Notes: generated by a model not told the origin, from the letters alone. 64,000 bases of DNA from Octopus sinensis (GCF_006345805.1 NC_043000.1:159774001-159838000), one strand, 5' to 3'; counted from the first letter of the stretch, positions 8,660 to 54,860 are shown. Numbers and translations: made by a program.

Positions 8660-8847
8660 TGTTATATACCTACGTTAGCCACTACACACATTTTTTTTCT
8701 CTCCTTGTTTTTTCTGTATCCCATTCTGTAGAAGAGCGTAGACTCGAAACGTAAAAGACGTTTTCTATTCCTGAGCGTTATACTAATACATCTGTTTGTT
8801 TTGTACACCATCTGTCTTCGTCTTTTGTTTTTTTCGTAAACTGTCCC

Positions 8848-8850
<3 letters not shown>
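8660..8850 (+). mobile_element. Short Penelope-like non-autonomous unit with hammerhead-like motif (family 1)
   Basis: CTGTAGA-A-GAGC-GTAG-ACTC-GAA-ACGT-A at 8726-8753. Homologous to 13460-13650 (-). Ends at (TA)n. Confidence 0.6.
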
Positions 8851-8881
<31 letters not shown>

Positions 8882-9076
8882 GTACGTATAACTATAAGCT
8901 AAGCATATTTTCAAAAAATGATTATATCAGTGGCCTAGCGCATAAAAGTGACCGTATAGATAAAATTAAAATATAATTAAAACAAATTTTAGCTTGAATT
9001 GTAGGTATTTGACATCTACTTCTAGTGCAGGTGCTGGTTATATCTTGTAGCCCTTAATTATAATAATATTTTATAA

Positions 9077-9720
9077 CACTGGTCAACAAAATTAAATGTA
9101 TTATACTCAATATGAATGCAAACCAAATTTTTTAGATTAATTTTTCATGCTGATTTCAAGACTTCACTCCATTTGTATGCAGTACGTACAGTGTTTCAGT
9201 AGATATATCCAAATATTTACATATTTTCATATATCAAATCATTAACGTAATAAATAAGGAATATTATTTTTAGAAAGTAAATGAGTTTATCATTACTATT
9301 ATTCCACAAAGAGTGAATACACTCCAAAAAAATGGGTCAGACAAAACAAAGTTAGAAACATCGTGACTTGGATTTCCTGCGATGTTCCTGATCTGATTGA
9401 TCACGGTAAAGTGTCCAGCAGTAGTCAGCCAGCATACTGCCATTCCAGACATGGTCATTCAGTTCAGCTTAGGAAAGTTTCTGAGGTTCAAAACTATCGT
9501 CATCAGCCACGTAATCTTCCTCAGCAGCACTATCATGACAGTCAGCATCATCATCTAATGTTTGAATACCATCAACTGGTGGAACTGGACTGGCAGACTT
9601 CCATTGTGAGGCACAGTTCTCATTGCGGAATCCAAATTGGGATACACAATTTTGTGTTTATGCTTCATAGAAAATTTTGTGACATTTATTTTGCAAAAAT
9701 AACAGTTATTAAAATGGTGT
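9077..9720 (-). mobile_element. Internally deleted Chapaev3-like (CMC superfamily) DNA transposon remnant
   Basis: Minus translation HHFNNCYFCK...KIVYPNLDSAMRTVPH..LP(V)PP, an acidic tract, ELNDHV, then directly WNGSMLADYCWTLYRD..EHRRKS..F*. Terminus CACTGGTCAACAAA at 9077. Family name is from recalled motifs. Confidence 0.7.
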
Positions 9721-9724
9721 TTAC

Positions 9725-9960
9725 ATACATACTACATACATACATACATACATACATACATACATACATGAATGCATACATACATACATACATATATACA
9801 TATATACATACATGCATATACACATACATACATACATACATACATACGTACATACATGAATGCATACATACATCCATCCATACATACATACATACATACA
9901 TGCATGCATGCATGCATACATACATACATACATGCATACATACATACATACATACATACA

Positions 9961-9992
<32 letters not shown>

Positions 9993-9999
9993 CATATCC

Positions 10000-10037
<38 letters not shown>
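9725..10037. repeat. (TACA)n followed by (TATC)n microsatellite
   Basis: Directly visible. Confidence 0.95.
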
Positions 10038-10235
10038 TTACAAATCACACCAACGATCATAACCTAACTGAAAAGAAAAGTTACATCTTGAATGCATGAA
10101 ACTATTAGTTGTTCAGATGTATGTTTTTGGGAAGTAAACGCATATGTGTATGTATATGTGTATACACCACAGAAACCAGGAAACCTGGCTAGGCTTGAAA
10201 AGGGCGCATAAATAAAAAATAAAATATATTACATA

Positions 10236-10650
10236 GGCGCAGGAGTGGCTGTGTGGTAAGTAGCTTGCTAACCAACCACATGGTTCCAGGTTCAGTCCCA
10301 CTGCATGACATCTTGGGCAAGTGTCTTCTGCTATAAGCCCCGGGCCGACCAATGCCTTGTGAGTGGATTTGGTAGACGGAAACTGAAAGAAGCCCGTCGT
10401 ATATATGTATATATATGTGTATGTGTGTGTTTGTGTGTGTGCTTGTCCCCCTAGCATTGCTTGACAACCGATGCTGGTGTGTTTATGTCTCCATAACTTA
10501 GTGGTTTGGCAAAAGAGACCGATAGAATAAGTACTGGGCTTACAAAGAATAAGTCCCGGGGTCGAGTTGCTCGACTAAAGGCGGTGCTCCAGCATGGCCA
10601 CAGTCAAATGACTGAAATAAGTAAAAAGTAAAAGAGAAAGAGTAAGAGTA
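10236..10650 (+). mobile_element. tRNA-derived SINE, family A, full length
   Basis: Head ggcgcaggagtggctgtgtggtaag, B-box-like ggttcagtccc, cttgggcaag core, TA/TG linker, tail actgaaataagtaaaaag. Multiple copies in the window. Confidence 0.9.
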
Positions 10651-11959
10651 CGTAGATATATTCCTGAATCTTATAACAAGTGAAGTTGTACACCTTAAGT
10701 TTATAGATATGTATACATCATTAAGGAAAGACAGATCTGTCTCGGTCTATTAATGTCTTCACACTAAAACGTCTTAAGGTGGGAAATATATATATAAAAA
10801 TAACAAAGACAAAAGCAAGAAGATAATTTGTCAAGTACATCTTAATAATAAAAGTGTGTAAAAGTCATTAGTACAAATATAAATCAAAAACAGATTTAAA
10901 ACCACCAAAATTTATTTAAACGTATCAATGTTGGGACAAGCATCGCTGTAAATAGAGGTAAATTTCAGTAGCCAACATATGACAGACATTTTAGTACAAA
11001 ATTTACCCCACTGAATGCTTGAAATTTATCGAATTTTAATGCCTGCACATTAAATGTAATGTTTAGTGACATACTGGATTGACGATAGGAAGTTTCTTAG
11101 ACGCCTATACCCAAATAGTATGTTAGTATATCGGGTCATTTGTCCGCTAGGAGACCAATATCTCTCCAATGTGGTATACAGAGTAACGCATATTGTAACA
11201 AATAATACCAGAACACTCTGCGGTTGACTTTAAAGGACTTCAATAGACACGGTGGAGATGTACTTTTTTGAAAATCTAGGGATAAGGAGACTGTCTACTT
11301 ACCTAATACATTTCATTTAGAATTTCAGAGATCAGATACAAAGTTTCCTTGGTGTGACCTGGAGAATTATCCATTCACAAGAGGAGTACAGCAGTCACTG
11401 TACTCCTCAACAAGAAGTCAGAATTGATTTCCTTTGGCTGTCAGGATCGAAATTTTTCCTGCTCCACTTCCAATCATACATTCTGTGGAGAATTAAAGAG
11501 TGAGCTCTTTTACAAATGGAAAATTTGAAAGGGAGTGAAAATTCATAAAAATATATGGCATATCCCCACCACCCCGACAAAAAAACCCAAAAAACAGCAA
11601 GCAAGACTGAACTAACTTTAAAGTCAAACGTGGAAAACACTTGAATGTCAGCAGACTGATGAATTGGGATTCATCTTAAATGTAACCAAACCCAAAGTAA
11701 AAGTAAAGAGAGTAGAATTATTAATTGGTAACCAACAGATAGTCACACGCTCACATAAACATATATGTACACAAACACACACACACGCGCGCGAACATAT
11801 ATGAGCAAGCACGCATGCACATACAAACGTACAAATATAATTATTTACACATCCGCGCACAAGCACACACATACACATGTAATAAATAGAAATTTAAAAG
11901 GTTTTTTCGCTGCTCTTCTGGAACATCTTTTTCGTCTGGAACGCATTTTCCTTGTATGT

Positions 11960-13290: not shown

Positions 13291-13412
13291 AAAAAAAAAG
13301 AGAATTATTATATATATATAACATATATATATACATACATAAGTATCATATATCATATATATGATAGCCTTCTTTCAATTCGCGTCTCCCAAATCAATCA
13401 TAAGCCTATATA

Positions 13413-13448
<36 letters not shown>

Positions 13449-13459
13449 CATTATATATA

Positions 13460-13650
13460 TATGGGGAGAGTTTACGGAAAAAACAAAAGACGAAGACGGA
13501 TGGTGTACAAAACAAACAGATGTTTTAGTATAACGCTCAGGAATAGAAAAAGTCTTTTACGTTTCGAGCCTACGCTCTTCTACAGAAAGGGACTCAGAAA
13601 ACAAGGAGAGACACTAGGAGAGAAAAAATGTGTGTATTGGCTAACGATCT
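13460..13650 (-). mobile_element. Short Penelope-like unit with hammerhead-like motif (family 1)
   Basis: Reverse complement of 13554-13589 is cttt CTGTAGA A GAGC GTAG GCTC GAA ACGT A aaag. (TA)n on both sides. Confidence 0.65.
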
Positions 13651-15580: not shown

Positions 15581-17337
15581 TTAGAAGGGAAGAAAGAGTA
15601 TGATAAATATGACCAGAAATGAGAAGAATCAAGCGAGAAAGAGAAAGTGTGTGTATATATATGTGTGTGCGAGTGTATACATATATAAGTTCGTGTGTGA
15701 GTGCGTGCATATGTGTTTATATTCAATGTTTGTGTTGTGTAGTAGCGCATTCTTGTGTTGTGTAGTAGCGCATTCTTATGTTGCTATATCAAAATTATGA
15801 AGAAAGCTTACAGAGTTACGTTTGTAAATGTCTCCCTAGGAATTAGACAGTTCCAGATGGTATTCTCTTCATGAACTCAAATCTGCTGCAAGAATCATCC
15901 AAGACATCGAAATTTAATCTTTTACAATTAATCTATAGAACCGAGCGAAATGAAAAGCATGACGAAGAAATAGAAATACCGACTCACATATATGCACGTT
16001 CAGGCATAAACACACACAGACACACACACATATGTGCGTATGTGCACGCATGTGCGTATGTATTAATTAATACTATATATATTTATGCACATACATACAT
16101 ACATAAATATATATGTACATATATACATATATATATATGTATATATGTACATATATACATACATATATACATATATATATATATAAATATATGGTTGCAT
16201 AAATACATACACACATACATTCCTACATGCATATATATATACATATGTATATATATATATATGTATATATGTACACACACACACATATATATATATATAT
16301 TGTATATAATATATATATATATATAATATAATATATATATACACATATACATATATATATATCTATGTAATATGATAATACATACACATGCATGTAAACT
16401 ATATACACAACTATACATGCACCATATATATACATATATATATGCATATATGTAAATGAATATATAATATTGTATTTGTGTGTTTATATAAATATGCATG
16501 TATGAATGTATGTATGTATGTATGTATGAGTGTATGTGTGTATTTGTGTATGTATGTATGCATGCATACAAATGTAAATAGATGCATAGTTAAATAAATA
16601 GATAAATAATTATAAATATCAGTATATGTATATGTTTGTGTGTATATCTCCTTGTGTGTATTTAAGTATAAGTGTAATTCGTATTTGCTTGTGTAAGTGA
16701 CTGTGTATGTATGTATGTACGTATATTAAAATCACTATATGCTTGGGTGATTGTGTGTGGGGGTGTGTATACAAATGTGAGTCTATGGAGTCATTCTATC
16801 AAAGCCTTACTTCCCTTTCATTCCACTTAGTGTCAAATCCGTCTAAGATTTCCGTGAAAGTAAATGCCATCCTCCATAGTCTTTATTTTCGGAAGTTCTC
16901 TATAAAAGCGACACTTTCCTAATACGGTCTGGCAGATCAAATGCATTTGAAACATGGACGTTTACCTATATCTGTTTGTAATTAGACACGGCAGTCTCGT
17001 CTTTGCAAGTGCATGTATATGCATGTACACATTCACACTCGCTTACACACAAACGGACTTTCATACGCTTTCACACACATCCAAATATACATGCTAGTAA
17101 ACATGCTAACACAAGCACCGAATCAACGACACAGTTTCTACATGGTTTCTGGTCTCACCAAAATTATGAATAATTGTGAAATCGCTTCAAATCCCATCCA
17201 CTTATCACAAAACAAGAGAAAATGCAGTGGAGTATCTGGAAAATAAGACAAATTTGTCCCAATTGGAGAACCCTACTTTGTCTGCTTATTTAAGACCACA
17301 GCTAACGCACGCACCTAACTGTACACAAACGCCTACA

Positions 17338-17405
<68 letters not shown>

Positions 17406-17409
17406 CATC

Positions 17410-17469
<60 letters not shown>

Positions 17470-19443
17470 GTCTGTCTGTCTATCTATCTGTCTATCCATC
17501 TGTCTGTCTGTCCATTCATCCATCCATTCATCCATCTATCTATCTATCTATCTCACAATGGACGGACGCTAGTCATATCGGCTCCACGNNNNNNNNNNNN
17601 NNNNNNNNNNNNNNNNNNNNNNNNNNNNNNNNNNNNNNNNNNNNNNNNNNNNNNNNNNNNNNNNNNNNNNNNNNNNNNNNNNNNNNNNTTAGAAGGGAAG
17701 AAAGAGTATGATAAATATGACCAGAATGAGAAGAATCAAGCGAGAAAGAGAAAGTGTGTGTATATATATGTGTGTGCGAGTTATACATATATAAGTTCGT
17801 GTGTGAGTGCGTGCATATGTGTTTATATTCAATGTTTGTGTTGTGTAGTAGCGCATTCTTGTGTTGTGTAGTAGCGCATTCTTATGTTGCTATATCAAAA
17901 TTATGAAGAAAGCTTACAGAGTTACGTTTGTAAATGTCTCCCTAGGAATTAGACAGTTCCAGATGGTATTCTCTTCATGAACTCAAATCTGCTGCAAGAA
18001 TCATCCAAGACATCGAAATTTAATCTTTTACAATTAATCTATAGAACCGAGCGAAATGAAAAGCATGACGAAGAAATAGAAATACCGACTCACATATATG
18101 CACGTTCAGGCATAAACACACCCAGACACACACACATATGTGCGTATGTGCACGCATGTGCGTATGTATTAATTAATACTATATATATTTATGCACATAC
18201 ATACATACATAAATATATATGTACATATATACATATATATATATGTATATATGTACATATATACATACATATATACATATATATATATATAAATATATGG
18301 TTGCATAAATACATACACACATACATTCCTACATGCATATATATATACATATGTATATATATATATATGTATATATGTACACACACACACATATATATAT
18401 ATATATTGTATATAATATATATATATATATAATATAATATATATATACACATATACATATATATATATCTATGTAATATGATAATACATACACATGCATG
18501 TAAACTATATACACAACTATACATGCACCATATATATACATATATATATGCATATATGTAAATGAATATATAATATTGTATTTGTGTGTTTATATAAATA
18601 TGCATGTATGAATGTATGTATGTATGTATGTATGAGTGTATGTGTGTATTTGTGTATGTATGTATGCATGCATACAAATGTAAATAGATGCATAGTTAAA
18701 TAAATAGATAAATAATTATAAATATCAGTATATGTATATGTTTGTGTGTATATCTCCTTGTGTGTATTTAAGTATAAGTGTAATTCGTATTTGCTTGTGT
18801 AAGTGACTGTGTATGTATGTATGTACGTATATTAAAATCACTATATGCTTGGGTGATTGTGTGTGGGGGTGTGTATACAAATGTGAGTCTATGGAGTCAT
18901 TCTATCAAAGCCTTACTTCCCTTTCATTCCACTTAGTGTCAAATCCGTCTAAGATTTCCGTGAAAGTAAATGCCATCCTCCATAGTCTTTATTTTCGGAA
19001 GTTCTCTATAAAAGCGACACTTTCCTAATACGGTCTGGCAGATCAAATGCATTTGAAACATGGACGTTTACCTATATCTGTTTGTAATTAGACACGGCAG
19101 TCTCGTCTTTGCAAGTGCATGTATATGCATGTACACATTCACACTCGCTTACACACAAACGGACTTTCATACGCTTTCACACACATCCAAATATACATGC
19201 TAGTAAACATGCTAACACAAGCACCGAATCAACGACACAGTTTCTACATGGTTTCTGGTCTCACCAAAATTATGAATAATTGTGAAATCGCTTCAAATCC
19301 CATCCACTTATCACAAAACAAGAGAAAATGCAGTGGAGTATCTGGAAAATAAGACAAATTTGTCCCAATTGGAGAACCCTACTTTGTCTGCTTATTTAAG
19401 ACCACAGCTAACGCACGCACCTAACTGTACACAAACGCCTACA

Positions 19444-19511
<68 letters not shown>

Positions 19512-19515
19512 CATC

Positions 19516-19575
<60 letters not shown>

Positions 19576-19694
19576 GTCTGTCTGTCTATCTATCTGTCTA
19601 TCCATCTGTCTGTCTGTCCATTCATCCATCCATTCATCCATCTATCTATCTATCTATCTCACAATGGACGGACGCTAGTCATATCGGCTCCACG
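15581..19694. repeat. Near-identical ~2.0 kb direct duplication (15581-17588 and 17689-19694) split by a 100-N gap; probable assembly overlap
   Basis: Both copies start ttagaagggaag and end gctccacg, exactly at the gap edges. ORF track entries are duplicated with a ~2106 offset. Confidence 0.9.
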
Positions 19695-19877
19695 TAAGTT
19701 GGCCACTTTTACATGTTTAAAACTCCTTGTTGTCAAATATTTTGTTTTAATCGTTGTGCAAGTTCATTCACTAAAAAACCTGAGAATTATTCACGTAGAA
19801 TTCCGCCCCTGTATGGGCGAAATTACAAAAAAACTTTCAAAACTTTCGTGGGTTTTTTAGCCATTTTCATTTTGAAA

Positions 19878-21866
19878 ATGGCAACTAGAAACCACGTGGC
19901 TAGCCCGCCAGTCATGCAGAACGGTAGCAAAACACTATTGCTACCACTAGCTGCTAAACATCGCAGCGTGAACACCGCTGTCACCACCATCACCACCACC
20001 AACAACAACAACAACAAATCTAACGTCGCATTCACCATCGCCGCGACCAAAGACATTAACTTAGATTTCCCCTCACTCCCCACACCAGTGTTGATGATAA
20101 AGGGACAGAGAAAGGGATTTCAAAAATGAATACAAACGAAAACATGAATGCCAGCACCACCACACACCCCACCATCACCACCAACAACAAAACAACGAAA
20201 TTGGCACAAAGTCGCCTACCAAAGACAACACGCCAACACCAACACCACTACTACGACGTCAAATGCTACATCAAGCCTTCTGCTGCTAATACCGCCAACA
20301 CCAACACCACTACCATGACTTCATTAACACTGCCACAATTAACACTTCTACTGCCAAATTCAAAACGAATTTGCGGACGTAACAAAACAAAAAAGAACAA
20401 TTGTAACATTCACCACACAAGAGATAAACCGCACAAAGGCACTCTTCTCCAAAGAAGGAGACAAATTGCACCTTCATATTCCACACACATCGTGGAAACA
20501 CACAAAAAAAAAACAATAATTTATAAAGTAATAAACAAAAAAACAAGAAGAACAGAAAATGCACCGCAGGAAAAAATCGATAAATGCCTTCGTCCTGCAT
20601 GGGACTCCAAGGAATATATCAGTTGGGGAAACAAATTTGGTACAGTCCAAGTACGTTCCTCAACGAAAGTTTAGCAAAACGTTTTTCCACATTGGAGCTG
20701 CATTCGGACGACTTGGTAATGATACCAGTCTATTAAACAAAAGGGTCACGAAAGTCCAAATAAAAAACATACCATTTGATGTCGAAACACAATGGGTTGG
20801 TCTCTGCCATCTGCTTTGAAATGTCAGAGACAATGTCAGAGACAAACATCCTGGAAATCGCGGTTCTAGGAGAGAAAGACTATGTGGGCAAATCAATCGA
20901 ATTCCTGCTTCAATTGGATGAAGCAGCAAAGAGAGAAGATACCCACCGCTATAGAACTGCCAGGAGGCTACAAACTCTATAGTGGTAGAGGGCAGGCGAC
21001 CACGCTGCTATTTGTGTGGAAGCGAAAACACACTGAAAAAGACGTGCCCAACCACTGCACACCAAGAGCAACAACAACAACCACTACCACAACCAAAGCA
21101 CTCCGGAAAAAAAGCTCTACTACCCACACCACCATCAACACAGAAGACGACAAGAGAAGCACACCAAGCTAATCGTCATCAACCAAAAACCACTCGACAC
21201 CTGAAAAATACCAACACCACCATAACAGCAAAACCCAAGGAACAGAAAAACAAAGAAAACACACACAACTGATCCCCCATCCCTTATACCGCATCAACAC
21301 ACACAAACACTCAAACAACCAACAACAACACAAACACTTACACAGACATACATAGAAAGCCCACAACATACCCTACCCCTTCTGATTCCTCAGAAATTTC
21401 GTCGGAAGACGAAACCAGTGAGGAATGGCAAATAGCTACAAAAGAAGGAAAATAAAGAGCAGAAACACAACCAAACCAAATGCAAACACGAACAAAGCAG
21501 GGGAAATACATCTCCCGAAGACATTTCAAAACCCAACGCAAACAACAGCCACACCAAAACACACAAAAAACATATACAGCAAACATGCTCACAGCCATAG
21601 ACACCAAAAACACAAATTTGATGGAATACATCCAATCAAAAACAAACATAACAGAAGATGACATAAAACAAACAATCACCCATACACAACACCACCAGAC
21701 CACATCAAAATATTACACATCTCCAAAAGTCTGCACCACACACTCAAAGGCATTTTCCCCAGTGCGGTTGGTAAATGCCAAAAATATCTCACAAAAGAAA
21801 CTGTACTGGGATCTTCTCGAGGACAAACCAACGGAGGAGAAAGCAAAACTTTCGAGCAGTAAGTAA
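19878..21866 (+). pseudogene. LINE ORF1 (gag-like), frameshifted
   Basis: ATG at 19878 (MATRNHV). T/N/Q/H-rich low-complexity segments, RVTKVQIKNIPFDV, and a zinc-knuckle-like GRRPRCYLCGSENTLKKTCP (C-X2-C-X4-T-X4-C) at ~20990-21050. Stop at 21866. Confidence 0.75.
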
Positions 21867-21893
21867 CCCTCTGTATTCTAATTCATTAGAACT

Positions 21894-24800: not shown

Positions 24801-25334
24801 TTCGGGCCAGGGCCATGGACAACTTCCAGAGATCCCTGGCCTGGCAGTGCTACCGAGAAGCGCTACCCGTTCGGGATAAGCTCTACAGACACGGCTCGAG
24901 AAACACGGGCCGACCTGCCGAGATGCGGTCAGAGCGACGAAACCGTTCTGCACGCACTCGTTCAGTGTCCAACAATTTCCGACCTGTGGGCTTATGTCGA
25001 ACAACTGCTGTCACGTGTGGGACGAGTCGGTTTATCAGCTGAGTCTATCGTCAATATTGTCACGCCTCCTTCCTTCAAACGGGAAGGAAGAGCTATTTTC
25101 ATCATCCTTGTGGCTATGGCGAAAGAATGTATCTGGTGGACGCGTCTGAAAGGATTGGAACACAAACACTTTCCTCTCTGGTCAATCTCTCATCAACTTC
25201 TTCAAGTACCACTTGAAAAGGAAAGTGAGAGTAGAGAGGCAAGTTTGTCTAGCGAATGTTTTAAAAAAAGATGGGTGAATGTAGCAAGAATGGCACGTAT
25301 GAATGACGAAGCCACCTTGAGCATAGTCCTATGA
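21894..25334 (+). pseudogene. LINE ORF2: APE endonuclease + reverse transcriptase + C-terminal Cys/His motif, with multiple frameshifts
   Basis: IGCVNARGL..IAISETRL, VGDWN, SYLDRIL, DHK (APE). SPGLDGLPYE, RPITLLNADLKILAK, VRQGCPLS, YADDVT (RT). RCGQSDETVLHALVQCP near the C-terminus. Confidence 0.93.
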
Positions 25335-25810
25335 ACCCGAAATCGAAAACAGAGAGTTGCTTATTTGCAAAAAAAAAAGAAATATAAAATGTGACTTCAT
25401 TGACGAGGTTACCGTGGTCTTTTCCGTAGGCTTTTCTTTCCACGGGTAAACCTCACCTGTCCTCCCCTTTACACTTCATATTGACATTTCTGTGATAACG
25501 ATCCCTATTGATCAATTTTTTTTTCTCTCCCCCCTTTTTTTTTTTTTTTAAACCCCCTTTCTTTTGTCCTCTTTCTCTCCTTTTACGATCCTTTTGATCG
25601 AAACTCCCTTCCTTCTTTTTTTTTTTTTTATTTTTTTTTTTTTTTTAAACCTTCAAAAGAAAAGCTCTACCTTGTAATTTGTTCTATCTGTGTGCAGCCC
25701 TGTGTGGCTAATAAAGAAATCTATCTATCTATCTATCTATCTATCTGTCTGTCTGTCTGTCTATCTGTCTATCCATCTGTCTGTCTGTCCATTCATCCAT
25801 CCATTCATCC

Positions 25811-25852
<42 letters not shown>

Positions 25853-25981
25853 TATCTATCATCTATCTATCTATATATACTATCTATCTATTTGTCTGTC
25901 TGTCTGTCTATATGTCTATCCATCTGTTGTCTGTCCATTCATCCATCCATTCATCCATCTATTATATCTATCTATCTATTT

Positions 25982-26077
25982 TTTTTTTTTTTTTTTTTTT
26001 TTTAATACCTTCAAAAGAAAAGCTCTACCTTGTAATTTGTTCTATCTGGGGCAGCCTGTGTGGCTAATAAGAAAACA

Positions 26078-26078: not shown

Positions 26079-26118
<40 letters not shown>

Positions 26119-26202: not shown

Positions 26203-26258
<56 letters not shown>

Positions 26259-42624: not shown

Positions 42625-42667
<43 letters not shown>

Positions 42668-42681
42668 TATTATTATCATTA

Positions 42682-43171
42682 TTCAGTAGTTTTATTTTTA
42701 TAGCGTGCTTTCACTTCACTACCGAGCACAGCTCTGTGTGCCTTGGGTATGTGCTGTGATTTGTTGTGATGCTCTGATGGTTATTGTATGGAAAGTGTTC
42801 TGCGTAGGATGTGTGCAGTGCCTAGCAGTGCAATTTTCTGTATGTTATTTGTGTTTGTTAGTCCTGGTGTTTTTGTTATGTATTTGTCTGAATATTCTTT
42901 TATCATGCCTAATGCACCTACTATGATAGGAATTGTTTCTGTTTTTAGATTCCACATTCGAGTTACCTCTATTTGCAGGTCTTTGTGTTTTGAAAGTTTC
43001 TCCAATTCTTTTAGTGGCACGTTGTCATCTGCCGGTATTGATACATCAATTAGAAAGCATTTTTTTTCTTCATGATCTCTGACAACTATATCTGGTCTGT
43101 TGGTCTTAATTTCTCTATCTGTGTGTATTGGCATAGCCCAGTGTATGGTTGCTTTCTCCTTCTCTGTGACC
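42682..43171 (-). mobile_element. 5'-truncated R4/Dong-like RLE LINE (family a) in (TAA)n
   Basis: NRPDIVVRD..KCFLIDVSIPAD RLE motif, IVGALG. 3' end aataaaactactgaa-(taa)n. (TAT)n on both sides. Confidence 0.9.
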
Positions 43172-43244: not shown

Positions 43245-46200
43245 TTTTTTTCTTCTTTAAAATTTTCTTCCATTTCTTGCCGAGTGTCTTCCCGACTCCT
43301 AGGGCAAAGAAACTCATAGTGTATATTGGTAGGCCATTAAACCAAACTCAGTAGTTCGTTCATTTTTTTTTTTTTTTTTTTTTTTAAATTAAAATACATG
43401 AGCAGCAACAGTTCTCACATCGACAATGCTCTTCTCAATACGTGTGATGTACCAGTTAAGACAATCTTTTGCACTTCTTGCAGGATGGTAAGCCAGGGAT
43501 CATTCTCATATAATTTTCGGTTCCCTTCTTGATCATTCCTAGTGCTCCTACAATCACTGGTATTGTAACCGCCTTGAGATGCCACATTTTCTCAATTTCA
43601 ATGAGTAGGTCTTTATATTTTCTGAGCTTGTCAAACTCTTTCGCTGAGATATTATGATCACAGGGGATGCTCATGTCGATCAATAAGCAAACTTTATTGT
43701 TTTGGTCTTTCACAACAATATCTGGTTTATTGGCCTTGATGGTTCGGTCTGTATGTACTGGAAAGTCCCACAGAATGGTTACATTTTCTCCTTCAGTTAC
43801 AGCCTCAGCGTGGTGATTATACCACTTGTCGGCAGTTTTGATATTGTAATGCCGACTTATTAGCCAGTGGAGATATTGGCCAACTCTGTCATGTCTTAAT
43901 TTATACTCCACTGGTGCTAAGACTTTACATCCAGAGATTAGGTGGTCCACTGTTTCAATCATGTCGTTGCAGAATCGGCATTTTGGGTCTGCTCCATTTT
44001 TCATCACATTGGCCTGGTAGTTCCGGGTTAATAGGCTTTGTCTTGAGCAGCCAGGATGAAACCTTCGCTCTCTGCTTTTAGCCCTGAGCTCCGCAGCCAC
44101 TGATGGGTTTGCTTCTGGTCAACATCAGCTTGTTTGCTGCGGGTCACATATTTGCCGTGCAGAGGTTTCTCCTCCCACCTATCAGCCAATTGCTCGTGCG
44201 CTTTTTTCATTGCCATCATTTTCACCTTCTTTGCAACAATAACTGCCGTACTTCCCCTCGGTTTTTCAGTTTGGGTATCCTGCACGAGATCAATAGCAAA
44301 TTTTTTGCTTTCCTTGCTGATAGAATGAAGCTTCTTTCGTCTCTCGTGATTTTCCACGAGCTTTAGCATCCAGTCATTCGATATTTCGAGATATTTGGCC
44401 AGTCCAATTGTGGTTGTTTTGTAAGCTAGTTCAAATTGGATCAGGCCTCGACCTCCTTGGGCTCTGGGAAGGTAAAGGCGATCTACGTCTGCCTTTGGGT
44501 GGTGCATCCTATTACAACTCAGCAGCTTGCGAATTTTTCTATCTATATTCTTTGCTTCACTCATATTCCAGTTCAACACATTGTAGCTATAAGTAACAAC
44601 TGGAACTGCTAAGGAATTTATAGCTAACACCTTTTACGTGCATTTAGTTCAGATTTCAGGACTGCACGAACTCTCCTATAACATTCCTTCCGATTTTTCT
44701 TCTCTTTCAATGCTTGCATGCTGAATACCAGAGCCTTCATTATATCCCTAAATATTTGTATGTCTGTTCTTGCTCAAGCTCTCTTATGACTGTGTCAACA
44801 TCTAACACGACTGAATTTGTGGTCTTCACTTTCCCTTTCTGGAAAGTGGCCTTGGCACACTTCTCAAGTCCAACTCCATCCCGATGTCATCGCTGAATGC
44901 TTTCACGGTGCGCAATAGGCCTTCAAGTTCATTATTGTCTTTACCATAAAGTTTTAAGTCATCCATATAAAATAGATGGCTTCTTTTTTTATTGGCAATT
45001 TTATACCCATACCCTGTTCTGTTTAATTCACTTGTAAGGGGTATTAGGGCTATGCAGATATTAAAGGTGAAAGTGAGTCACCTTGAAAATTCCACAGTTG
45101 ATGTTTATATTTTCTGAGGCAAGTACTCCATTAGAGTGGTATAATTGGAGATTCGTATTCCACAACGACATATTGTGCTTCAGGAAGTTTGAAATCACAG
45201 GGGAAATTTTAAAGATGTCCAGCGATCTCAAGATGGATGCGGTATACTGTCGAAGGCCTTTTTATAGTCAATCCATGCGGTGCTAAGATTTCTGCGCTTG
45301 TTGTGACAGTTCTCAAGGATCATACGATTGATTAGCAGTTGATTTTTGCATCCGTAAGAGCCTCGGCGGCACCCTTTTTGTTCAATGGGGAAAATATCGT
45401 TCTTCTCCATGAATGCATATGTTTTTTCTCCGCCAGGATAGATGTTAGGATTTTATACGTGGTGGAAAGACAGGTTATAGGCCGATAGTTTTTTGGAAGG
45501 TTGGTTTCGTTATTCTTTGGAGTAGGTAAGTAATGCCACTTGCTAACCATTCAGGTGTTTTTCTTTGGGTCTCTCAAAATTCCATTGAGCAGCTGAACTA
45601 GCTTACCGTGTGCGCACGGGAGCGATGCGAGCCAGAAATTCGGCACCCTATCTTTACCGGGGGATTTCCAATTATAGGCCTTCGTGAGTGCCTTTCTTAG
45701 GTCTGCTATTGTGATGTCTTCCCATGCTTGTTGTTGTAAATTTTGGTAGGATCCTTCAGTTTGTATAATCCAGTCTGCATTTATGTTGTACGTCTTCTTG
45801 TCACTCTAAATCCTTTCCCAAAAGTTTTGAACTTCTTCCATGGGAGGGGGGTCTTTAACGGTTACTTTCTCCTTCCCTATTTCTCTGTAGAATTTTTTGG
45901 CATTGGATGTGAACAGCTTATTTTGCTTGTAAAACTTGTTCTCTTCTCAAATCTTCGTATTCTTTGGGCTTTTGCTTGGACTTTTTGTTTCAGCGTTTCT
46001 TTTATTGATATCAGTTCTTCTCTTGGTGAGGATCCAAATTTTCTCTTCATCTTTCTTCCTGTTCTGGATCTTACATCATTTCCACATATTAGTTCATTTA
46101 ATATTGATATTTCCCCTCTCATAAATTCAATCTCTTTTTCAATTTTACTTCTCCAGGTTTGATTTCTTCCCAGGTTTTGTTTTCTTTGTTTTTTCGGGGG

Positions 46201-46980
46201 CATAGCTGGTTTCAATTGCCCTAGCAGAAGCGTAAATAATTTCATTTAACTCAGTAAAATCAGGTTTTAATTCTCGTATTATTTCATTTGTTACATAGTT
46301 GCCAATTTGGATTTGTTTTTTTTTTGTTTTGTATTTGAGAGTTTATGAAGCGGTTCTCTATCATTCATACTTGTATGTCTTACACCTTCAAGCGTATTCA
46401 GGATTTTCTGCCTCATTTCTGCCATAGACTCTCTGTGTTCTTCAGCAAATGCGAGATCTTCAGTTACTGTTGTTTTTTTCGTTTTCCTGGTATCTTTAAC
46501 AGGTACAATAAATTTCTTGTATCTTCAGGCCTTTGCGTACTTTGGTCAGATGGCAGTCTTTCAATTAAGCCTCGTGGCGGGCTATACTGTTCATCTGATT
46601 CTTCATTTCCTTTGTGTCTTATATTTATGTCATTTTCCGTTGCGTGCTTGATCGCACTTATTTCACTGTCTGTGAGTCTGTTATTTCTAAAGATATCCCT
46701 CCTCACATTTGCTAATTTGTTCTCGTCCAAATAGGGCCTACTGTCTTGATTCCGTGTTCTCCATATACTGTAAGAGTTTGTGGTGTGTCTCTCTTGAGAT
46801 GGCCTACCTAATGCGTAGTAATAAGCGTATATTACTTCTTTATACTCTTCTCGGGTCCATTTGTTCCGCTTACATTTTTCTTTCTGTGGTGGTTGTGGTG
46901 GTGAACTTGGAGGGCTCGAGTTGGGGGATTTCCCGTTCAAGTGACCATCCATGTCCGTATTCGGAGAAGAGTTTGTGCCA
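43244..46980 (-). mobile_element. Near-complete R4/Dong-like RLE LINE (family b), single RT-RLE ORF with frameshifts, in (TAA)n
   Basis: KRNKWTREE N-terminus, NYRPITCL, EQKGCRRG, WIDYKKAFDSIPH, GIFQGDSLSP, YMDDLKLY, CRFCNDMIETVDHLISGC, KPDIVVKD..LIDMSIP. (TAA)n at both ends. Confidence 0.92.
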
Positions 46981-47042
<62 letters not shown>

Positions 47043-47097
47043 TAGTTCAAGTGACCATCCATGTCCGTATTCGGAGAAGAGTTTGTGCCAATTATTA

Positions 47098-47197: not shown

Positions 47198-48480
47198 TTC
47201 AGTAGTTTTATTTTTATAGCGTGCTTTCACTTCACTACCGAGCGCAGCTCTGTGTGCCTTGGGTATGTGCTGTGATTTGTTGTGATGCTCTGATGGTTAT
47301 TGTATGGAAAGTGTTCTGCGTAGGATGTGTGCAGTGCCTAGTAGTGCAATTTTCTGTATGTTATATGTGTTTGTAAGTCCTGGTGTTTTTGTTATGTATT
47401 TGTCTGAATATTTTTTTATCATGCCTAATGCACCTACTATGATAGAATTGTTTCTGTTTTCAGGTTCCACATTCTAGTTACCTTATTTCCAGGTCTTTGT
47501 ATTTTGAGAGTTTCTCCATTTCTTTTAGAGACACGTTGTCATCTGCCGGTATGATACATCAATTAGAAAGCATTTTTTCTTCATGATCTCTGACAACTAT
47601 ATCTGGTCTGTTGGCCTTAATTTCTCTATCTGTGTGTATCGGTATATCCCAGAGTATGGTTGCTTCTCGTTTTCTGTGACCTTTTCTGGTGTGTGCCTAT
47701 ACCATCTTTTTTCTGTTGTTATTACATAATGTTTGCATAGCTTCCAATGTATGTAGGTTCCAACTCTGTCATGTCTGTGAATATATTCCTTCTTAGCCAG
47801 GACTGGGCAGCTAGAGATAATATGATTTATTGTTTCTTGTCCATCTCCACATATTCTGCAGTTACTTGTAATATTTATTTTCATTACATGTTTTTGGTAA
47901 TTTCTGGTGGGGAGGCTTTGGTCTTGTGCTGCAATTAAAAATCCCTCTGTTTCTGCTTTGAGTCCTGAGCTTCTCAACCATTGCTGGGATTTTTCTTTGT
48001 CTATTTCTTTTGCGTTTAGTTTAGTGCAGTATTTACCATGAAGGGGTTTTTCTTGCCATCGTTTTATCATGGCTCGTTGCTGTTCTATTTTTAGTTTGGA
48101 TTTCATTTGTTTTATAGCTTTTGTTGTTTCTTCATCATCTTCTTCTTCTTCTTTGTGTTTATTAGGTGATATGATTTCTTGTTTGTATTTGTCAGCTTCC
48201 TTAAATACTGTGAACAGTTTTTTGTTTTGCTCGTGTTTTGCTGCTATCTGAATCAGTTTTCCTTCCTTCTGAAGTAGATATTTTTGCAGTCCTATGGTGG
48301 TTATTTTATAGTAGTTTTCCAGCCTTATAAGGCCTCTACCACCTTCTATACGTTGTATATATAGTCTTTCTATGTCAGATTTTGGGTGATGCATCCTAGA
48401 TCCTGTCAGTATTTTTCTTGTTTTCCTATCTATTTTGGACAGTTCATTTCGTGTCCAGTTAAGGATATTGTAGCTGTAAC
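47198..48480 (-). mobile_element. 5'-truncated RLE LINE family a
   Basis: ORF 47597-48394 HHPKSDIERLY..GGRGL..WLRSSGLKAETEGFLIAAQDQ..CRICG..ETINHIISSC. Same 3' end as 42682. Confidence 0.92.
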
Positions 48481-48668
48481 TTAGCCAGGACTGGGCAGCT
48501 AGAGATAATATGATTTATTGTTTCTTGTCCATCTCCACATATTCTGCAGTTACTTGTAATATTTATTTTCATTACATGTTTTTGGTAATTTCTGGTGGGG
48601 AGGCTTTGGTCTTGTGCTCAATTAAAAATCCCTCTGTTTTTCTGCTTTGAGTCCTGAGCTTCTCACCA
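48481..48668 (-). repeat. Internal duplicate of 47793-47980 of the same LINE
   Basis: ttagccaggactgggcagctagag...ctgagcttctc repeated almost exactly. Confidence 0.9.
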
Positions 48669-52479: not shown

Positions 52480-52635
52480 AGACGTGGCTGTGTAGTAAGA
52501 AGTTTGCTTCCCAACAAAACATTTCTGGGTTCAGTTCCACTGCACGGTAACTTGGACAACTATCTTTCACTTTCCAACCGACCACATACTTGTGAATAGA
52601 TTTCGTGAGCAGAAATTGAAAGAGGCTCACTGTAT
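52480..52635 (+). mobile_element. SINE family A, diverged 5' half
   Basis: gtggctgtgtagtaagaagtttgcttccc...gggttcagttccactgc. Confidence 0.8.
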
Positions 52636-52703
52636 GTATGTATGTATGTATGTATGTATGTATGTATGTATGTATTATGTATGTATGTATGTATGTATGT
52701 ATG

Positions 52704-52830
52704 TTATTCAGTTTTATTTCAATATTTCTTGCCAATAGAGAAAGAACCAGTTTCTAACCTAGATCCAAGGCTCCTTCATTGGAATTTCAACATTAACAAC
52801 AAGATATATTTGTCTGTTTGTTTGTACATA

Positions 52831-52866
<36 letters not shown>

Positions 52867-54105
52867 TGTATGTATGTATGTATGTATGTATGTATGTATG
52901 TATGTATGTATGTATGTATGCATATGTACAGATTTGTATGTTTCGTTTTAAATCTGTATCCTCATGCATATAGTTGAATATCTAGACATGCTCATATATA
53001 TTTAAGTGATAAACTTCTGGAACGATTTACAGATTTTTACAGTCCCAGTGATGGATTGGATCTGTAGTTTTCGAATTCGCTTTCTCTTTTCTGATTTTGA
53101 GAAGCCTAATTTCTCAAGATTGGTATTTAGGCAATATGTTACATATCCCAGGGCTCCAATAATTACAGGTATAAATCTGGAACTTGTAATATGGATAGAG
53201 TAACTGCAGATCCTTCAATAGTTCAGCGTAGGTATTCTGTTTTACTCTGATCTTAGGCTTTACGTTAACATCTGCTGGGTAACTAATTTCAAAAAATGTA
53301 CACAGTTTGTCTTCTCTATCCCAGATCATTATATCAGGTCTGCTGTAGTTACGTTTTATTGAGGTTTTCACTGGGACATCCCACCAGTACTCCTTTATAT
53401 TATGAGTGGCTATGGCTTCTACCATACTGTGGGTCCTTATTTCTTTGTCCTCCGGGTTATCCTTCCGACGGATTTCATTATAGAGTGTCCTCATTAGATA
53501 ATGCTGTGATGACATTTTCGGACAACTGCCTATGATGTGGGTGATATCTTCGGTGTTAACTCCACAAAGTCTGCATCGGCTGTCACATTTTACTGCTTTT
53601 CCTGCATCTCTATGCCTTTTGTGCATCAGGTATTTGGTTGATGTTTCCAGTTCCTGAATTGAGAACGGTCCCCACCTTCAAAGTGGGAGGTAGTAATCTA
53701 GCTATTGATCCATGATAGACTGCTTTGAGGATCGATGTTGCTATCAACTCGAAGATTTTTACTAACATATCCAAGCATGGTCTTCTGCTCATATATACTC
53801 CTCCTTTCATCTGATGATACGTTTAGGTAGAGTCGTGCGACTTCATTGGGCATGTATTTAAGATTATCAGATAAAGTGTGCTGCTCAAGGAGCTGCCTTC
53901 CAAGTCTTATAATGTTATCAGCATCATTTATGCAAACTTGGTCAACAGATGCACTTCGACACTTGGTGGTTAAAAGACGGATATGATATAACTATCAAAG
54001 GCATTTTGGATCGATGTTAAGACTCTGTCACCCTGTTTTCCCTTCAGATAGTGGTGGTCTACGTCACTGTTTGTGTGCAAATTATGCTTGCTTGCTAGTA
54101 TTTTG
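52704..54105 (-). mobile_element. 5'-truncated RLE LINE (TACA-associated family), decayed
   Basis: CRLCGVNTEDITHIIGSCP, RPDIMIWDREDKLCTFFEISYPAD, TYAELLKDLQLLYP. 3' end aataaaactgaataa-(cata)n. (TATG)n on both flanks. 5' boundary approximate. Confidence 0.85.
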
Positions 54106-54234
54106 TATGTACGTATGTATGTATGTATGTATGTATGTATGTATGTATGTATGTATGTATGTATGTATGTATGTATGTATGTATTTATGTATGCATGTAT
54201 GTATGTATGTATGTATGTATGTATTTATGTACGT

Positions 54235-54391
54235 TGTGTGTCTGTGTTTGTCCGCCACTGCCGATTGACAACCGGTTTTGGTTTATTTACCTCCCCATAA
54301 CATAGCTGTTTGGAAAAAAAGAAAATATAATAAATACCAGGCTTAAACAATAGATACTGGGGTCGATTCGTTCGGATAAAATCTTCAAGAT

Positions 54392-54429
<38 letters not shown>

Positions 54430-54480
54430 TTACTCGCTTCAGGGATTTGACTGCAGCCATGCTGGAATTCCGCCTTGGAA
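54235..54480 (+). mobile_element. SINE family A-like 3' half, diverged
   Basis: gattgacaaccggt...ggggtcgattcg...cagccatgctgg. Confidence 0.6.
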
Positions 54481-54549
54481 ATAAGCGGTACTTCTCGCGA
54501 GACGGATTCGGACCATCGACTGAAGGATGACAACTATTATTCAGCTAGT

Positions 54550-54643
<94 letters not shown>

Positions 54644-54659
54644 GTTATATATGCTTATA

Positions 54660-54860
54660 TGTGTGTACCGTTGTCGATTTTTCCCCCTGTCTTCCTTTCT
54701 TGGATCTTTCCTTTTCCTATGTTTCTGACGAAGAGCTCCGCTCGAAACGTTAAACCCTCATTCTTTCCTTCTTTCCGGAGCGTCCAATAATACTATATTT
54801 TTTCCATGTCCTCGCGTTGTTGTGTTTTCTCTTTGTGTTTTCATGTTTGGATTGACTATA
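54660..54860 (+). mobile_element. Short Penelope-like unit (family 2) with minimal type I hammerhead
   Basis: gttt CTGACGA A GAGC TCC GCTC GAA ACGT T aaac at 54721-54755. (TA)n on both sides. Confidence 0.7.

What the first reader, a model, noticed from the sequence alone, without database searches (positions are those of the whole stretch)
8660..54860. Microsatellite niche partitioning: four retroelement groups each occupy their own repeat motif
Seen: all five copies of the young Tx1 family sit in (TATC)n in one orientation. All young Dong-like RLE copies at 42.6-47.2 kb end in (TAA)n. Another RLE family has (TACA)n at both ends at two loci ~24 kb apart (28.4 kb + and 52.7-54.1 kb -), always as (CATA)n on its sense strand. 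The short hammerhead-bearing Penelope-like units (8.7, 13.5, 54.7 kb) abut (TA)n. Established: microsatellite-specific LINEs exist (Dong in TAA, Kibi/Koshi of the Tx1 group in TC/TTC, Waldo in ACAY). Inference: several such specialists coexist here, each using a different motif as a safe haven. By duplicating or extending targets they may help generate this genome's very high microsatellite load.
Basis: partly seen in the sequence, partly recalled or inferred. Interest (0 to 1): 0.8.

Follow-up and report, generated by a model that had tools for sequence, protein, structure and literature searches.

The report
Retroelements that live inside microsatellites
In this octopus-like genome region, four kinds of retroelement each sit next to their own simple repeat (TATC, TAA, CATA, TA); the pattern is real, but microsatellite-specific retroelements are already known, so these are new examples rather than a new principle.

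Summary
Five copies of an APE+RT LINE of the L1/Tx1 group all lie in (TATC)n in one orientation, with TATC on both sides of both clusters and a fixed 3' junction phase. Four Dong-like RLE copies each end in (TAA)n. An RLE family has (CATA)n at both ends at two loci, with different 5' truncation points. Three short hammerhead-type units end in (TA)n.

The host is an octopod. The gap at 17589-17688 is an unmerged 2-kb contig overlap, so one TATC array is counted twice. No element is broken by it.

Caveats:
- The "young" copies are 5-20% diverged and full of frameshifts.
- The independent loci are few: 2, 1, 2 and 3.
- The 5'-most Dong copy abuts (GAA)n, not TAA.
- Rfam finds no hammerhead, and only the 54.7-kb unit has an intact core.

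Relatives elsewhere carry other repeats: a Tx1-like relative has (ATT)n, and RLE relatives have ACAG, ACTC or ACTT repeats. Motif switching within lineages is the most interesting lead.

Microsatellite-specific LINEs (Dong, Kibi, Koshi, Waldo, Mino, Togen) and the (TA)n bias of Penelope-like elements are published, as is coexistence of several such specialists in one genome. I rate these as new members of a known kind, of moderate interest.

The parts
15581..19694 (.). Assembly artefact. Two 2-kb blocks, 15581-17588 and 17689-19694, flank the 100-N gap at 17589-17688. They are an unmerged contig overlap.
   Evidence: 99.85% identity over 2008 bp. The left block ends 35 bp into copy A.
19441..19659 (+). 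(TATC)n array upstream of the full-length Tx1-like copy A. It contains the 68-bp variant block S.
19660..25719 (+). Tx1-like LINE copy A, about 6.06 kb. It has an ORF1 region with a CCHC-like knuckle, then APE (21882-22238), RT (23045-24214) and a C-terminal zinc-binding region. It carries many frameshifts and stops. It ends GGCTAATAAAGAAA.
   Evidence: Pfam Exo_endo_phos, RVT_1 and zf-RVT. PDB best match is L1 ORF2p, E 3e-32. Frames.
25720..26951 (+). TATC array of cluster 1. It is interrupted by two 5'-truncated Tx1-like 3' fragments, 25979-26077 and 26260-26612. Block S recurs five times here (the sixth copy is upstream of copy A).
30662..30862 (+). (TCTA)n array upstream of Tx1-like cluster 2.
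30863..31373 (+). Tx1-like 3' fragment of about 510 bp, followed by (TATC)n at 31374-31435.
31436..34753 (+). Tx1-like copy B, 5'-truncated, 3.3 kb, 95% identical to A. It is followed by a short (TATC)n at 34754-34780 and then unique DNA.
42626..42683 (-). (TAA)19 tail or target at the 3' end of the Dong-like cluster, followed by unique DNA.
42684..43171 (-). Dong-like copy c1, 5'-truncated within the RLE domain. It ends AAAACTACTGAA.
43245..46981 (-). Dong-like copy c2, near full length (3.7 kb). It has an N-terminal region, RT, CCHC and RLE, with many stops. Its 5' terminus TGGCACAAACTC abuts (TAA)n. (TAA)24 at 43172-43244 follows its 3' end.
47040..47090 (-). Mini Dong-like copy. It joins the first 46 bp of the 5' end to the last 8 bp of the 3' end. 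(TAA)n lies on both sides, at 46982-47039 and 47091-47199.
47200..48668 (-). Dong-like copy c3. Its 5' end is rearranged by a 190-bp internal duplication. Its 5' flank is (GAA)70 at 48669-48876.
28283..28911 (+). RLE 'CATA' family copy at 28413-28840, 5'-truncated. (ATAC)n at 28283-28412 precedes it and (CATA)n at 28841-28911 follows it. An older related fragment follows at 28945-29073.
52631..54231 (-). RLE 'CATA' family copy at 52705-54103, with CCHC plus RLE at 53117-53677. It has an internal expanded (CATA)n at 52811-52920. (CATA)n lies at the 5' side (54104-54231) and the 3' side (52631-52704).
8673..8881 (+). Hammerhead-type short unit at 8673-8846. Its core reads CUGUAGA, so position 6 is changed. 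(TA)17 follows it.
13407..13646 (-). Second unit of the same family at 13465-13646, 87.5% identical to the first. (TA)n follows it. Upstream lies the (TA)n beside a SINE half at 13711-13819.
54669..54895 (+). Related unit at 54669-54858 with an intact minimal hammerhead core at 54725-54748. (TA)n follows it. Upstream (TA)n at 54552-54664 lies next to a SINE half.

Best explanation
The window comes from an octopod cephalopod genome. It holds decayed copies of four retroelement lineages:
- an APE-type LINE of the L1/Tx1 group in (TATC)n;
- a Dong-like RLE LINE in (TAA)n;
- a second RLE LINE in (CATA)n;
- short non-coding derivatives of Penelope-like elements in (TA)n.

Each lineage integrates by target-primed reverse transcription into one microsatellite motif in one orientation.

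**Likely mechanism (inferred).** The endonuclease nicks the repeat. Read-through leaves the same repeat at the 3' end of the element RNA, and that repeat pairs with the nicked target to prime cDNA synthesis. Tail and target are therefore the same sequence. The 3' junction phase is fixed. Resident copies, which end in the repeat, become preferred landing sites. The result is same-orientation head-to-tail clusters of 5'-truncated copies separated by the repeat.

**Shown:** element identities at domain level, junction sequences, family-by-motif exclusivity, and repeats on both sides for the Tx1-like and CATA families.

**Inferred:** nicking specificity, tail-target pairing and the order of events.
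For: **Domains**
- APE and RT, with a weak sub-threshold zf-RVT hit. The RT is closest to L1 ORF2p (3e-32) and much further from R2 (5e-16).
- The RLE families align to the R2 CCHC and KPD...D...K motifs and to each other (E 1e-20).

**Junctions**
- Tx1-like: 5 of 5 copies have TATC on both sides. Four of five have the 3' junction ...AAAGAAACA|TATC.
- CATA family: 2 of 2 loci have CATA on both sides, with different truncation points.
- Dong-like: 4 of 4 have a TAA tail. The full-length 5' terminus abuts TAA twice.
- Hammerhead units: 3 of 3 have a 3' (TA)n.

**Chance and free arrays**
- Per-site chance is 0.001-0.013.
- Free CATA arrays exist at 9722-9990 and 63570-63796, and a free TATC array at 10000-10037. 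So arrays exist without elements.

**Other loci**
- A 96%-identical Dong-like copy ends in (AAT)18 (L003).
- Four tandem relatives are each followed by (AAT)n (L005).
- A shrimp homologue has TAA arrays on both sides (L004).
- Older RLE relatives in the window also end in CATA-like repeats.

**Literature**
- Dong, Kibi, Koshi, Waldo and Mino (PMC3812793).
- Togen and some HERO families (PMC4640811).
- The (TA)n bias of Penelope-like elements (PMC8557442).
- Dong-R4, L1-Tx1 and Penelope families are active in Octopus vulgaris (PMC13282606).
Against: - There are few independent loci: Tx1-like 2 clusters, Dong-like 1, CATA 2, hammerhead units 3.
- The 5'-most Dong-like copy abuts (GAA)n. Every TAA array in the window belongs to the cluster. 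That would also fit an element-borne tail.
- The Argonauta relative of the Tx1-like family ends GGCTAATAAAGAAA|TCTAT with no array.
- The 8.7-kb hammerhead unit has no 5' (TA)n.
- An older RLE relative at 61.7 kb has (TATG)n/(TA)n upstream, not CATA.
- The assembly is demonstrably unreliable at one TATC/element junction.
- No nicking or retrotransposition data exist for any of these elements.
Confidence: 0.7

Rival explanations
1. The repeats are element-borne 3' tails, not targets. Each family ends in its own short tandem repeat, as many LINEs do, and integrates more or less anywhere. Repeats at 5' junctions are then the tails of earlier copies that are heavily truncated or tail-only.
For: - Every TAA array, and nearly every TATC array, in the window is attached to an element.
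- The 5' flank of Dong-like c3 is (GAA)n.
- Relatives have family-specific tails: ATT, ACAG, ACTC, ACTT.
- RTE elements in octopus are reported to have microsatellite 3' UTRs (PMC9115989).
Against: - Both Tx1-like clusters and both CATA loci have 130-220 bp of the repeat upstream of the 5'-most copy, with no trace of an earlier 3' end.
- The Argonauta relative has the conserved 3' terminus without a TATC array.
- Free CATA arrays are common.
- Dong is documented as TAA-specific.
Confidence: 0.15
2. The clusters are not series of independent targeted insertions. They arose in a single event, when the reverse transcriptase jumped from one read-through RNA to the 3' end of another. Alternatively they arose by local unequal crossing-over within the arrays, or they are partly assembly artefacts.
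For: - A 68-bp variant block S follows each of the three 3' ends in Tx1-like cluster 1 at only 20-38 bp. It recurs six times, nearly identically.
- The Dong-like mini copy joins a 5' end directly to a 3' end.
- Tandem same-orientation clusters recur in relatives (L005, L002, L001).
- A contig break and a 2-kb duplication sit exactly at a TATC/element junction.
Against: - The fragments differ by 5-17% from each other and have different truncation points.
- Cluster 2 lacks block S.
- This rival explains clustering, not why separate loci of one family share one motif and orientation.
Confidence: 0.1
3. The co-location is passive. Elements and microsatellites both accumulate in gene-poor, low-recombination DNA, and there is no mechanistic link.
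For: - The window is gene-poor, and 11.7% of it is microsatellite.
- Passive accumulation near CA repeats was proposed for Drosophila Waldo-A/B (PMC3812793).
Against: - The junctions are base-exact, and the phase and strand are constant.
- The family-by-motif match is perfect over 14 termini, against per-site expectations of 0.1-1.3%.
- Older L1-like fragments at 35-464 and 41014-41454 do not abut TATC.
Confidence: 0.03

Closest known systems
Dong (R4/Dong clade RLE LINE; Bombyx mori, Anopheles gambiae, the snail Biomphalaria glabrata), specific for (TAA)n
   Same: - Single ORF with RT followed by a CCHC motif and a PD-(D/E)XK-type endonuclease.
- (TAA)n on the sense strand after every copy.
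- The same association holds for relatives in four other sequence sources, including a shrimp.
- Dong-R4 families are reported as abundant in octopus genomes.
   Different: - No reference Dong sequence was available, so clade placement is not shown.
- One 5' junction lies in (GAA)n.
- The copies here are dead.
Kibi and Koshi (Tx1 clade, fish), specific for (TC)n and (TTC)n
   Same: APE-type LINE of the L1 group inserted in a microsatellite in a single orientation, with no poly(A) and the repeat directly after the 3' end.
   Different: - The motif is the tetranucleotide (TATC)n, which the review read here (PMC3812793) does not list among the microsatellite-specific LINE targets.
- The host is a cephalopod.
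- Placement in Tx1 rather than L1 proper is inferred, not tested.
- A 71%-identical relative uses (ATT)n.
Waldo (R1 clade, insects), specific for (ACAY)n
   Same: The target motif class is the same: (CATA)n equals (ACAT)n, which is an ACAY repeat.
   Different: The element here has a restriction-like endonuclease and a CCHC motif after the RT, not an N-terminal APE. It is an unrelated lineage with a convergent motif.
Microsatellite-specific HERO families and Togen (NeSL-related, (TG)n)
   Same: RLE LINEs outside R2 that target microsatellites.
   Different: The motifs differ. Whether the CATA family belongs to HERO, R4 or another clade was not testable.
Penelope-like elements and their minimal hammerheads or retrozyme-like derivatives; (TA)n insertion bias of Naiad/Neptune PLEs
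   Same: - The 54.7-kb unit has CUGACGA, an extra base before G10.1, a G10.1-C11.1 stem II, a palindromic ACGU at helix III and a 4-bp helix I. This matches the description of PLE min-HHRs.
- (TA)n lies at the 3' junction.
   Different: - No PLE ORF lies nearby.
- The units are solitary, not tandem.
- Two of the three have a changed core position 6.
- Rfam hammerhead models do not score them.
- The published (TA)n bias is for Naiads, which lack canonical hammerheads.

Membership tests
Dong / R4 clade RLE LINE | RT followed by a CCHC motif and a PD-(D/E)XK restriction-like endonuclease in one ORF | tested here: met
   The conceptual translation of 43245-46981 (-) shows RT motifs, then CRFC...H...C, then KPDIVV...LIDMSIP...KYK. 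These align to the same motifs of R2 structures 9nl3 and 9dou, weakly, at E 0.03.
Dong / R4 clade RLE LINE | Insertion in (TAA)n, with the repeat at both junctions | tested here: inconclusive
   - 3' side: 4 of 4 in the window, plus L003, L004 and L005.
- 5' side: the full-length terminus abuts TAA twice, but those arrays are tails of upstream copies. The outermost 5' flank is (GAA)n.
Dong / R4 clade RLE LINE | RT phylogeny groups with the Dong/R4/Rex6 references | not testable with these tools
   No named reference sequences were available. The homologue table gives no TE names. Indirect support: Dong-R4 is reported in octopus.
Tx1 clade (L1 group) | N-terminal APE endonuclease plus RT plus a C-terminal zinc-binding region | tested here: met
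   - RVT_1: 42.6 and 53.7 bits, above threshold.
- Exo_endo_phos: 22.7 bits, just below the 24.5 cut-off, on a broken ORF.
- zf-RVT: weak.
Tx1 clade (L1 group) | RT closer to the L1 group than to other LINE groups | tested here: met
   Human L1 ORF2p E 3e-32, against R2 proteins at 5e-16 or worse.
Tx1 clade (L1 group) | Placement inside Tx1 rather than L1 proper | not testable with these tools
   No Tx1, Keno, Kibi or Koshi reference was at hand. Indirect support: the O. vulgaris annotation lists L1-Tx1, but no plain L1, among its active LINEs.
Tx1 clade (L1 group) | Sequence-specific insertion into a repeated target | tested here: met
   5 of 5 copies lie in (TATC)n, in the same strand, with a fixed 3' junction phase.
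Waldo (R1 clade) | APE-type endonuclease and an R1-clade RT | tested here: not met
   The CATA family has a C-terminal CCHC plus RLE, homologous to the Dong-like family. Only the ACAY motif class is shared.
Penelope-like element minimal hammerhead | Core CUGANGA ... [quoted passage not shown] | tested here: inconclusive
   - All features are present at 54716-54762. It is the only pattern match in the window, against 0.07 expected. Criteria are from PMC4209133.
- The 8.7- and 13.5-kb units have CUGUAGA.
- Helix I shows one compensatory change between families, GUUU/AAAC versus CUUU/AAAG.
- Monomer folding is not significant.
Penelope-like element minimal hammerhead | Match to curated hammerhead covariance models | tested here: not met
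   No Rfam hammerhead hit at the gathering score or at E up to 5. Minimal dimeric forms with almost no helix III may well escape these models.
Penelope-like element | RT plus a GIY-YIG ORF flanked by pLTRs | tested here: not met
   The Pfam scans of selected ORFs gave no GIY-YIG hit and no RT hit outside the LINE copies, and the open-frame listing shows only low-complexity frames next to the units. The units are at most non-autonomous derivatives or solo pLTR pieces.

The most novel reading that the evidence does not exclude
Microsatellite specificity in these lineages may be cheaply re-programmable. In this reading the target is chosen mainly by pairing between the repeat carried at the 3' end of the read-through RNA and the nicked repeat.

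- Sister families could then hop between motifs. The Tx1-like lineage shows TATC, ATT or none. The RLE lineage shows ACAT, ACAG, ACTC or ACTT.
- Each insertion could copy a block of the array, by a long target duplication or by 3' transduction. The recurring 68-bp block S would be an example.
- The elements would then be net producers of TATC- and TAA-type arrays in cephalopod genomes.
Probability: 0.2. Interest if true: 0.65.

Novelty: new member of a known kind. Interest (0 to 1): 0.38.

Why it matters
Target-specific LINEs are studied as models of 'safe-haven' integration and as possible tools for site-directed gene insertion.

- A (TATC)n-specific L1/Tx1-type element and an (ACAT)n-specific RLE element would add two motifs to a short list, in a phylum where only a snail Dong is listed in the review read here.
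- Close relatives that carry different repeats offer natural swap experiments on what sets specificity: the endonuclease, a DNA-binding domain or the RNA tail.
- For cephalopod genomics, the result warns that TATC and TAA arrays are largely retroelement-associated.
- It also warns that assemblies break at these junctions.

Tried and rejected
- **Rfam, whole window at gathering score and two sub-regions at E up to 5.** No hammerhead was found, only spurious microRNA-model hits on microsatellites. The hammerhead call rests on a motif search and manual comparison.
- **Monomer folding of the three cores.** Not significant, as expected for dimeric minimal forms. It gives no support either way.
- **Rfam on relatives L001 and L002.** I looked for a small-RNA gene target, which would be Tx1-clade behaviour. 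Nothing was found.
- **tRNA scan.** It was meant to classify the SINE. Nothing was found.
- **Naming the clades from homologue tables.** The sources give no TE names, so clade-level membership stayed untested.
- **Octopus bimaculoides homologue of the CATA family (L006).** The copy is 3'-truncated and surrounded by N runs, so it is useless for flanks.
- **Waldo membership for the CATA family.** Rejected, because the endonuclease type is wrong.
- **Passive co-accumulation.** Rejected on junction precision.
- **Not run.** I did not use the structure prediction, fold search or representative-library tools, because none would bear on target versus tail.

Full report
**Gap first.**
- The only N run is 17589-17688. 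A self-comparison shows that 15581-17588 and 17689-19694 are 99.85% identical over 2008 bp.
- The left block ends at the gap, 35 bp into the Tx1-like copy (CACAATGGACGG...). The right block begins at the gap.
- This is the signature of two contigs that overlap by 2 kb and were joined end to end. The letters on the two sides are therefore not continuous.
- The TATC array at 17338-17553 is the same array as 19444-19659. No element ORF spans the gap.
- The break also shows that the assembler failed exactly at a TATC/element junction, so the fine structure of this cluster needs long-read confirmation.

**Host and background.**
- The window is 37.8% G+C. Microsatellites of period 6 or less cover 11.7% of it, and the largest class is AGAT/TATC at 2.57%.
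- The best protein matches point to an octopod. They are Argonauta hians at 64%, a JGI metagenome contig (L012) at 71%, and Octopus bimaculoides LOC106878562 at 58% amino-acid and 80% nucleotide identity.

**Tx1-like family.**
- Pfam finds Exo_endo_phos at 21882-22238 and RVT_1 at 23045-24214, with a weak zf-RVT hit near the C-terminus.
- Among solved structures the RT matches human L1 ORF2p (E 3e-32) far better than R2 (5e-16). It is therefore an L1-group APE LINE.
- Tx1 rather than L1 proper could not be tested. It does fit the O. vulgaris annotation, which lists L1-Tx1 but no plain L1 among its active LINEs.
- Five 3' ends exist: copy A 19660-25719, fragments 25979-26077, 26260-26612 and 30863-31373, and copy B 31436-34753. 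All are on the + strand.
- A and B are 95% identical. The fragments are 83-92% identical to copy A. Every long frame is broken, so 'young' is relative.
- All five 5' flanks end in ...TATCTA or ...TATC. All five 3' ends (...GGCTAATAAAGAAA, usually followed by CA) run straight into TATC repeats in the same phase.
- Both clusters have about 200 bp of TATC upstream of their 5'-most copy, with no earlier 3' end in front of it. The repeat is therefore a target and not only a tail.
- Only two small TATC arrays are unoccupied, 10000-10037 and 35115-35131.

**An unexplained detail in Tx1-like cluster 1.**
- A 68-bp variant block ending CCATTCATCCATCCATTCATCCATC occurs six times. It lies 20-38 bp after each of the three 3' ends and also just upstream of copy A.
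- It could be a higher-order repeat of the original array, a target duplication of about 100 bp, a 3' transduction from a master copy, or a trace of template jumping. The window cannot decide between these.

**Dong-like family.**
- On the minus strand, 43245-46981 translates, with many stops, into RT, then CRFC..H..C, then KPDIVV..LIDMSIP..KYK.
- These motifs align to the CCHC and restriction-like endonuclease of R2 structures.
- In sense order the cluster reads as follows:
  - (GAA)70;
  - c3 (47200-48668, 5' end rearranged);
  - (TAA)38;
  - a mini copy made of the first 46 bp and the last 8 bp;
  - (TAA)19;
  - c2, whose full-length 5' terminus is TGGCACAAACTC;
  - (TAA)24;
  - c1 (42684-43171);
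  - (TAA)19;
  - unique DNA.
- All five TAA arrays of the window are here.
- Taken alone, the window cannot tell tail from target, because the one outer 5' flank is GAA.
- Outside evidence helps:
  - a 96%-identical copy on another contig ends in (AAT)18;
  - four tandem relatives on L005 are each followed by (AAT)n;
  - a Penaeus indicus homologue (61% identity) has TAA arrays on both sides.
- Dong is the published (TAA)n specialist, including in a snail (PMC3812793). Dong-R4 families are reported in octopus.

**CATA family.**
- The ORF at 53117-53677 (-) has CCHC plus RPDIMIWD..FFEISYP. It aligns to the Dong-like C-terminus at E 1e-20. It is an RLE LINE, not a Waldo.
- The copy at 28413-28840 (+) and the copy at 52705-54103 (-) are truncated at different points. 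Both have (CATA)n on the sense strand directly at the 5' junction and after the conserved 3' end ...TTGAAATAAAACTGAATAA.
- Two older related fragments also end in CATA-like repeats. One is at 28945-29073, immediately after the first copy's tail. The other is at 61666-62807 and is split by a SINE.
- The 61.7-kb copy has (TATG)n/(TA)n upstream, not CATA.
- Large free CATA arrays exist at 9722-9990 and 63570-63796.

**Hammerhead-type units.**
- The 8.7-kb and 13.5-kb units are 87.5% identical. The 54.7-kb unit shares a conserved block with them.
- Rfam does not detect a hammerhead at any threshold tried.
- By hand, 54716-54762 reads GUUU-CUGACGA-A-GAGC-UCC-GCUC-GAA-ACGU-U/AAAC. That is the core, the extra base before G10.1, a G10.1-C11.1 stem II, a palindromic helix III and a 4-bp helix I.
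- These are the features listed for PLE minimal hammerheads (PMC4209133). The pattern occurs once in the window, against 0.07 expected.
- The other two units have CUGUAGA, a change at an invariant position. Their helix I (CUUU/AAAG in the 13.5-kb unit) co-varies with that of the 54.7-kb unit.
- No PLE ORF is nearby.
- All three units run directly into (TA)n at the 3' end.
- Two of them have (TA)n 15-25 bp upstream. That (TA)n lies beside a half copy of a SINE family that carries an internal (TA/TG)n.
- A (TA)n insertion bias of PLEs is published (PMC8557442).

**Is it more than chance?**
- The fraction of oriented sites with the given repeat immediately downstream is 0.6-1.3% for TATC, 0.1-0.3% for TAA, about 0.8% for CATA and about 1.1% for TA.
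- Fourteen termini match family to motif without exception.
- Counting only about eight independent loci, a perfect assignment still has a probability of roughly 6e-4. This is my own calculation.

**Relatives with other motifs.**
- A Tx1-like relative (L012, 71% identity) keeps the 3' terminus GGCCAATAAAAGAAATC but is followed by (ATT)n.
- The Argonauta relative has the same terminus and no array.
- RLE relatives of the CATA family end in ACAT/ACAG repeats (L010), (ACTC)n with (ACTTACAT)n upstream (L007/L008), and (ACTT)n (L009).
- This suggests repeated motif switching within lineages. I consider it the most interesting lead, but it rests on single loci.

**Comparison with what is known.**
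- Microsatellite-specific LINEs in the R1, Tx1, R4, NeSL-related and HERO groups are established. So is the safe-haven rationale.
- Several specialists are listed for one genome: Waldo, Mino and Dong in Anopheles gambiae, and Kibi and Koshi in pufferfish.
- The 'niche partitioning' picture is therefore an apt description, not a new principle.
- What appears new is the TATC motif for an L1/Tx1-type element, the ACAT motif for an RLE element, and the cephalopod setting. I could not check Repbase.
- The claim that the elements build the genome's microsatellite load is plausible for TATC and TAA. It is not supported for the bulk of TA, AC and CATA arrays.

**Verdict.** These are new members of a known kind, of moderate interest.

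Noticed in passing
window 15581-19694: A 2-kb direct duplication flanks the 100-N gap at 99.85% identity. It is an unmerged contig overlap, and the contig broke 35 bp into a LINE that sits in a TATC array.
   Followed up: yes
window 19618, 25789, 25935, 26181, 26676, 26816: A 68-bp variant block of the TATC array (ending CCATTCATCCATCCATTCATCCATC) recurs six times. It lies 20-38 bp after each Tx1-like 3' end in cluster 1. It could be a higher-order repeat, a long target duplication, a 3' transduction or a template-jump concatemer.
   Followed up: partly
L012 1990-2105 (JGI metagenome contig): A Tx1-like relative (71% amino-acid identity) keeps the conserved 3' terminus but is followed by (ATT)n. 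This is the complement orientation of Dong's TAA repeat.
   Followed up: partly
L010 960-1028; L007/L008 6474-6552; L009 3123-3320: RLE relatives of the CATA family end in other AC-starting tetranucleotide repeats: ACAT/ACAG, ACTC and ACTT.
   Followed up: partly
window 10236-10650, 12898-13290, 38607-39057, 62357-62744, 51054-51423, 13711-13819, 54424-54476: A roughly 415-bp SINE (starting GGCGCAGGAGTGGCTGTGTGG) carries an internal (TA/TG)n microsatellite. Some copies are split or have inverted halves at that repeat. Two half copies border the (TA)n arrays next to the hammerhead units.
   Followed up: partly
window 47040-47090: A mini Dong-like copy joins the first 46 bp of the 5' end directly to the last 8 bp of the 3' end, between two TAA arrays. 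It suggests template switching.
   Followed up: partly
L003 1-30: On another contig of what is probably the same species, a Dong-like 3' end (CAGTAGTTTT preceded by TTA repeats) lies in inverted orientation against a second Dong-like copy.
   Followed up: no
homologue table: The Dong-like C-terminal region finds homologues at 52-61% identity in shrimp, coral, killifish, hydrozoan, sea star and sea anemone. That is unusually high across phyla, and horizontal transfer or strong constraint should be examined.
   Followed up: no
L002 348-12180 (ENA contig): Full-length Tx1-like relatives (about 50% identity) lie head to tail with a 7547-bp period. There is no microsatellite and no Rfam-detectable RNA gene between them.
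   Followed up: partly
window 8161-8251: An interstitial telomere-like array, (TTAGGG)n read on the other strand, with TTTAGGG variants.
   Followed up: no
window 60582-60878 and 36505-36795: A mariner/Mos1-type transposase remnant (HTH_48, E 1e-10) and a second, weaker helix-turn-helix fragment.
   Followed up: partly
window 35-464 (-) and 41014-41454 (+): Older L1-like RT fragments from other families (about 46-52% identity to the Tx1-like RT) are not associated with TATC arrays.
   Followed up: partly
window 9722-10037: A compound array, (TACA)67 followed directly by (TATC)10, contains no element. It would be a potential double target.
   Followed up: partly
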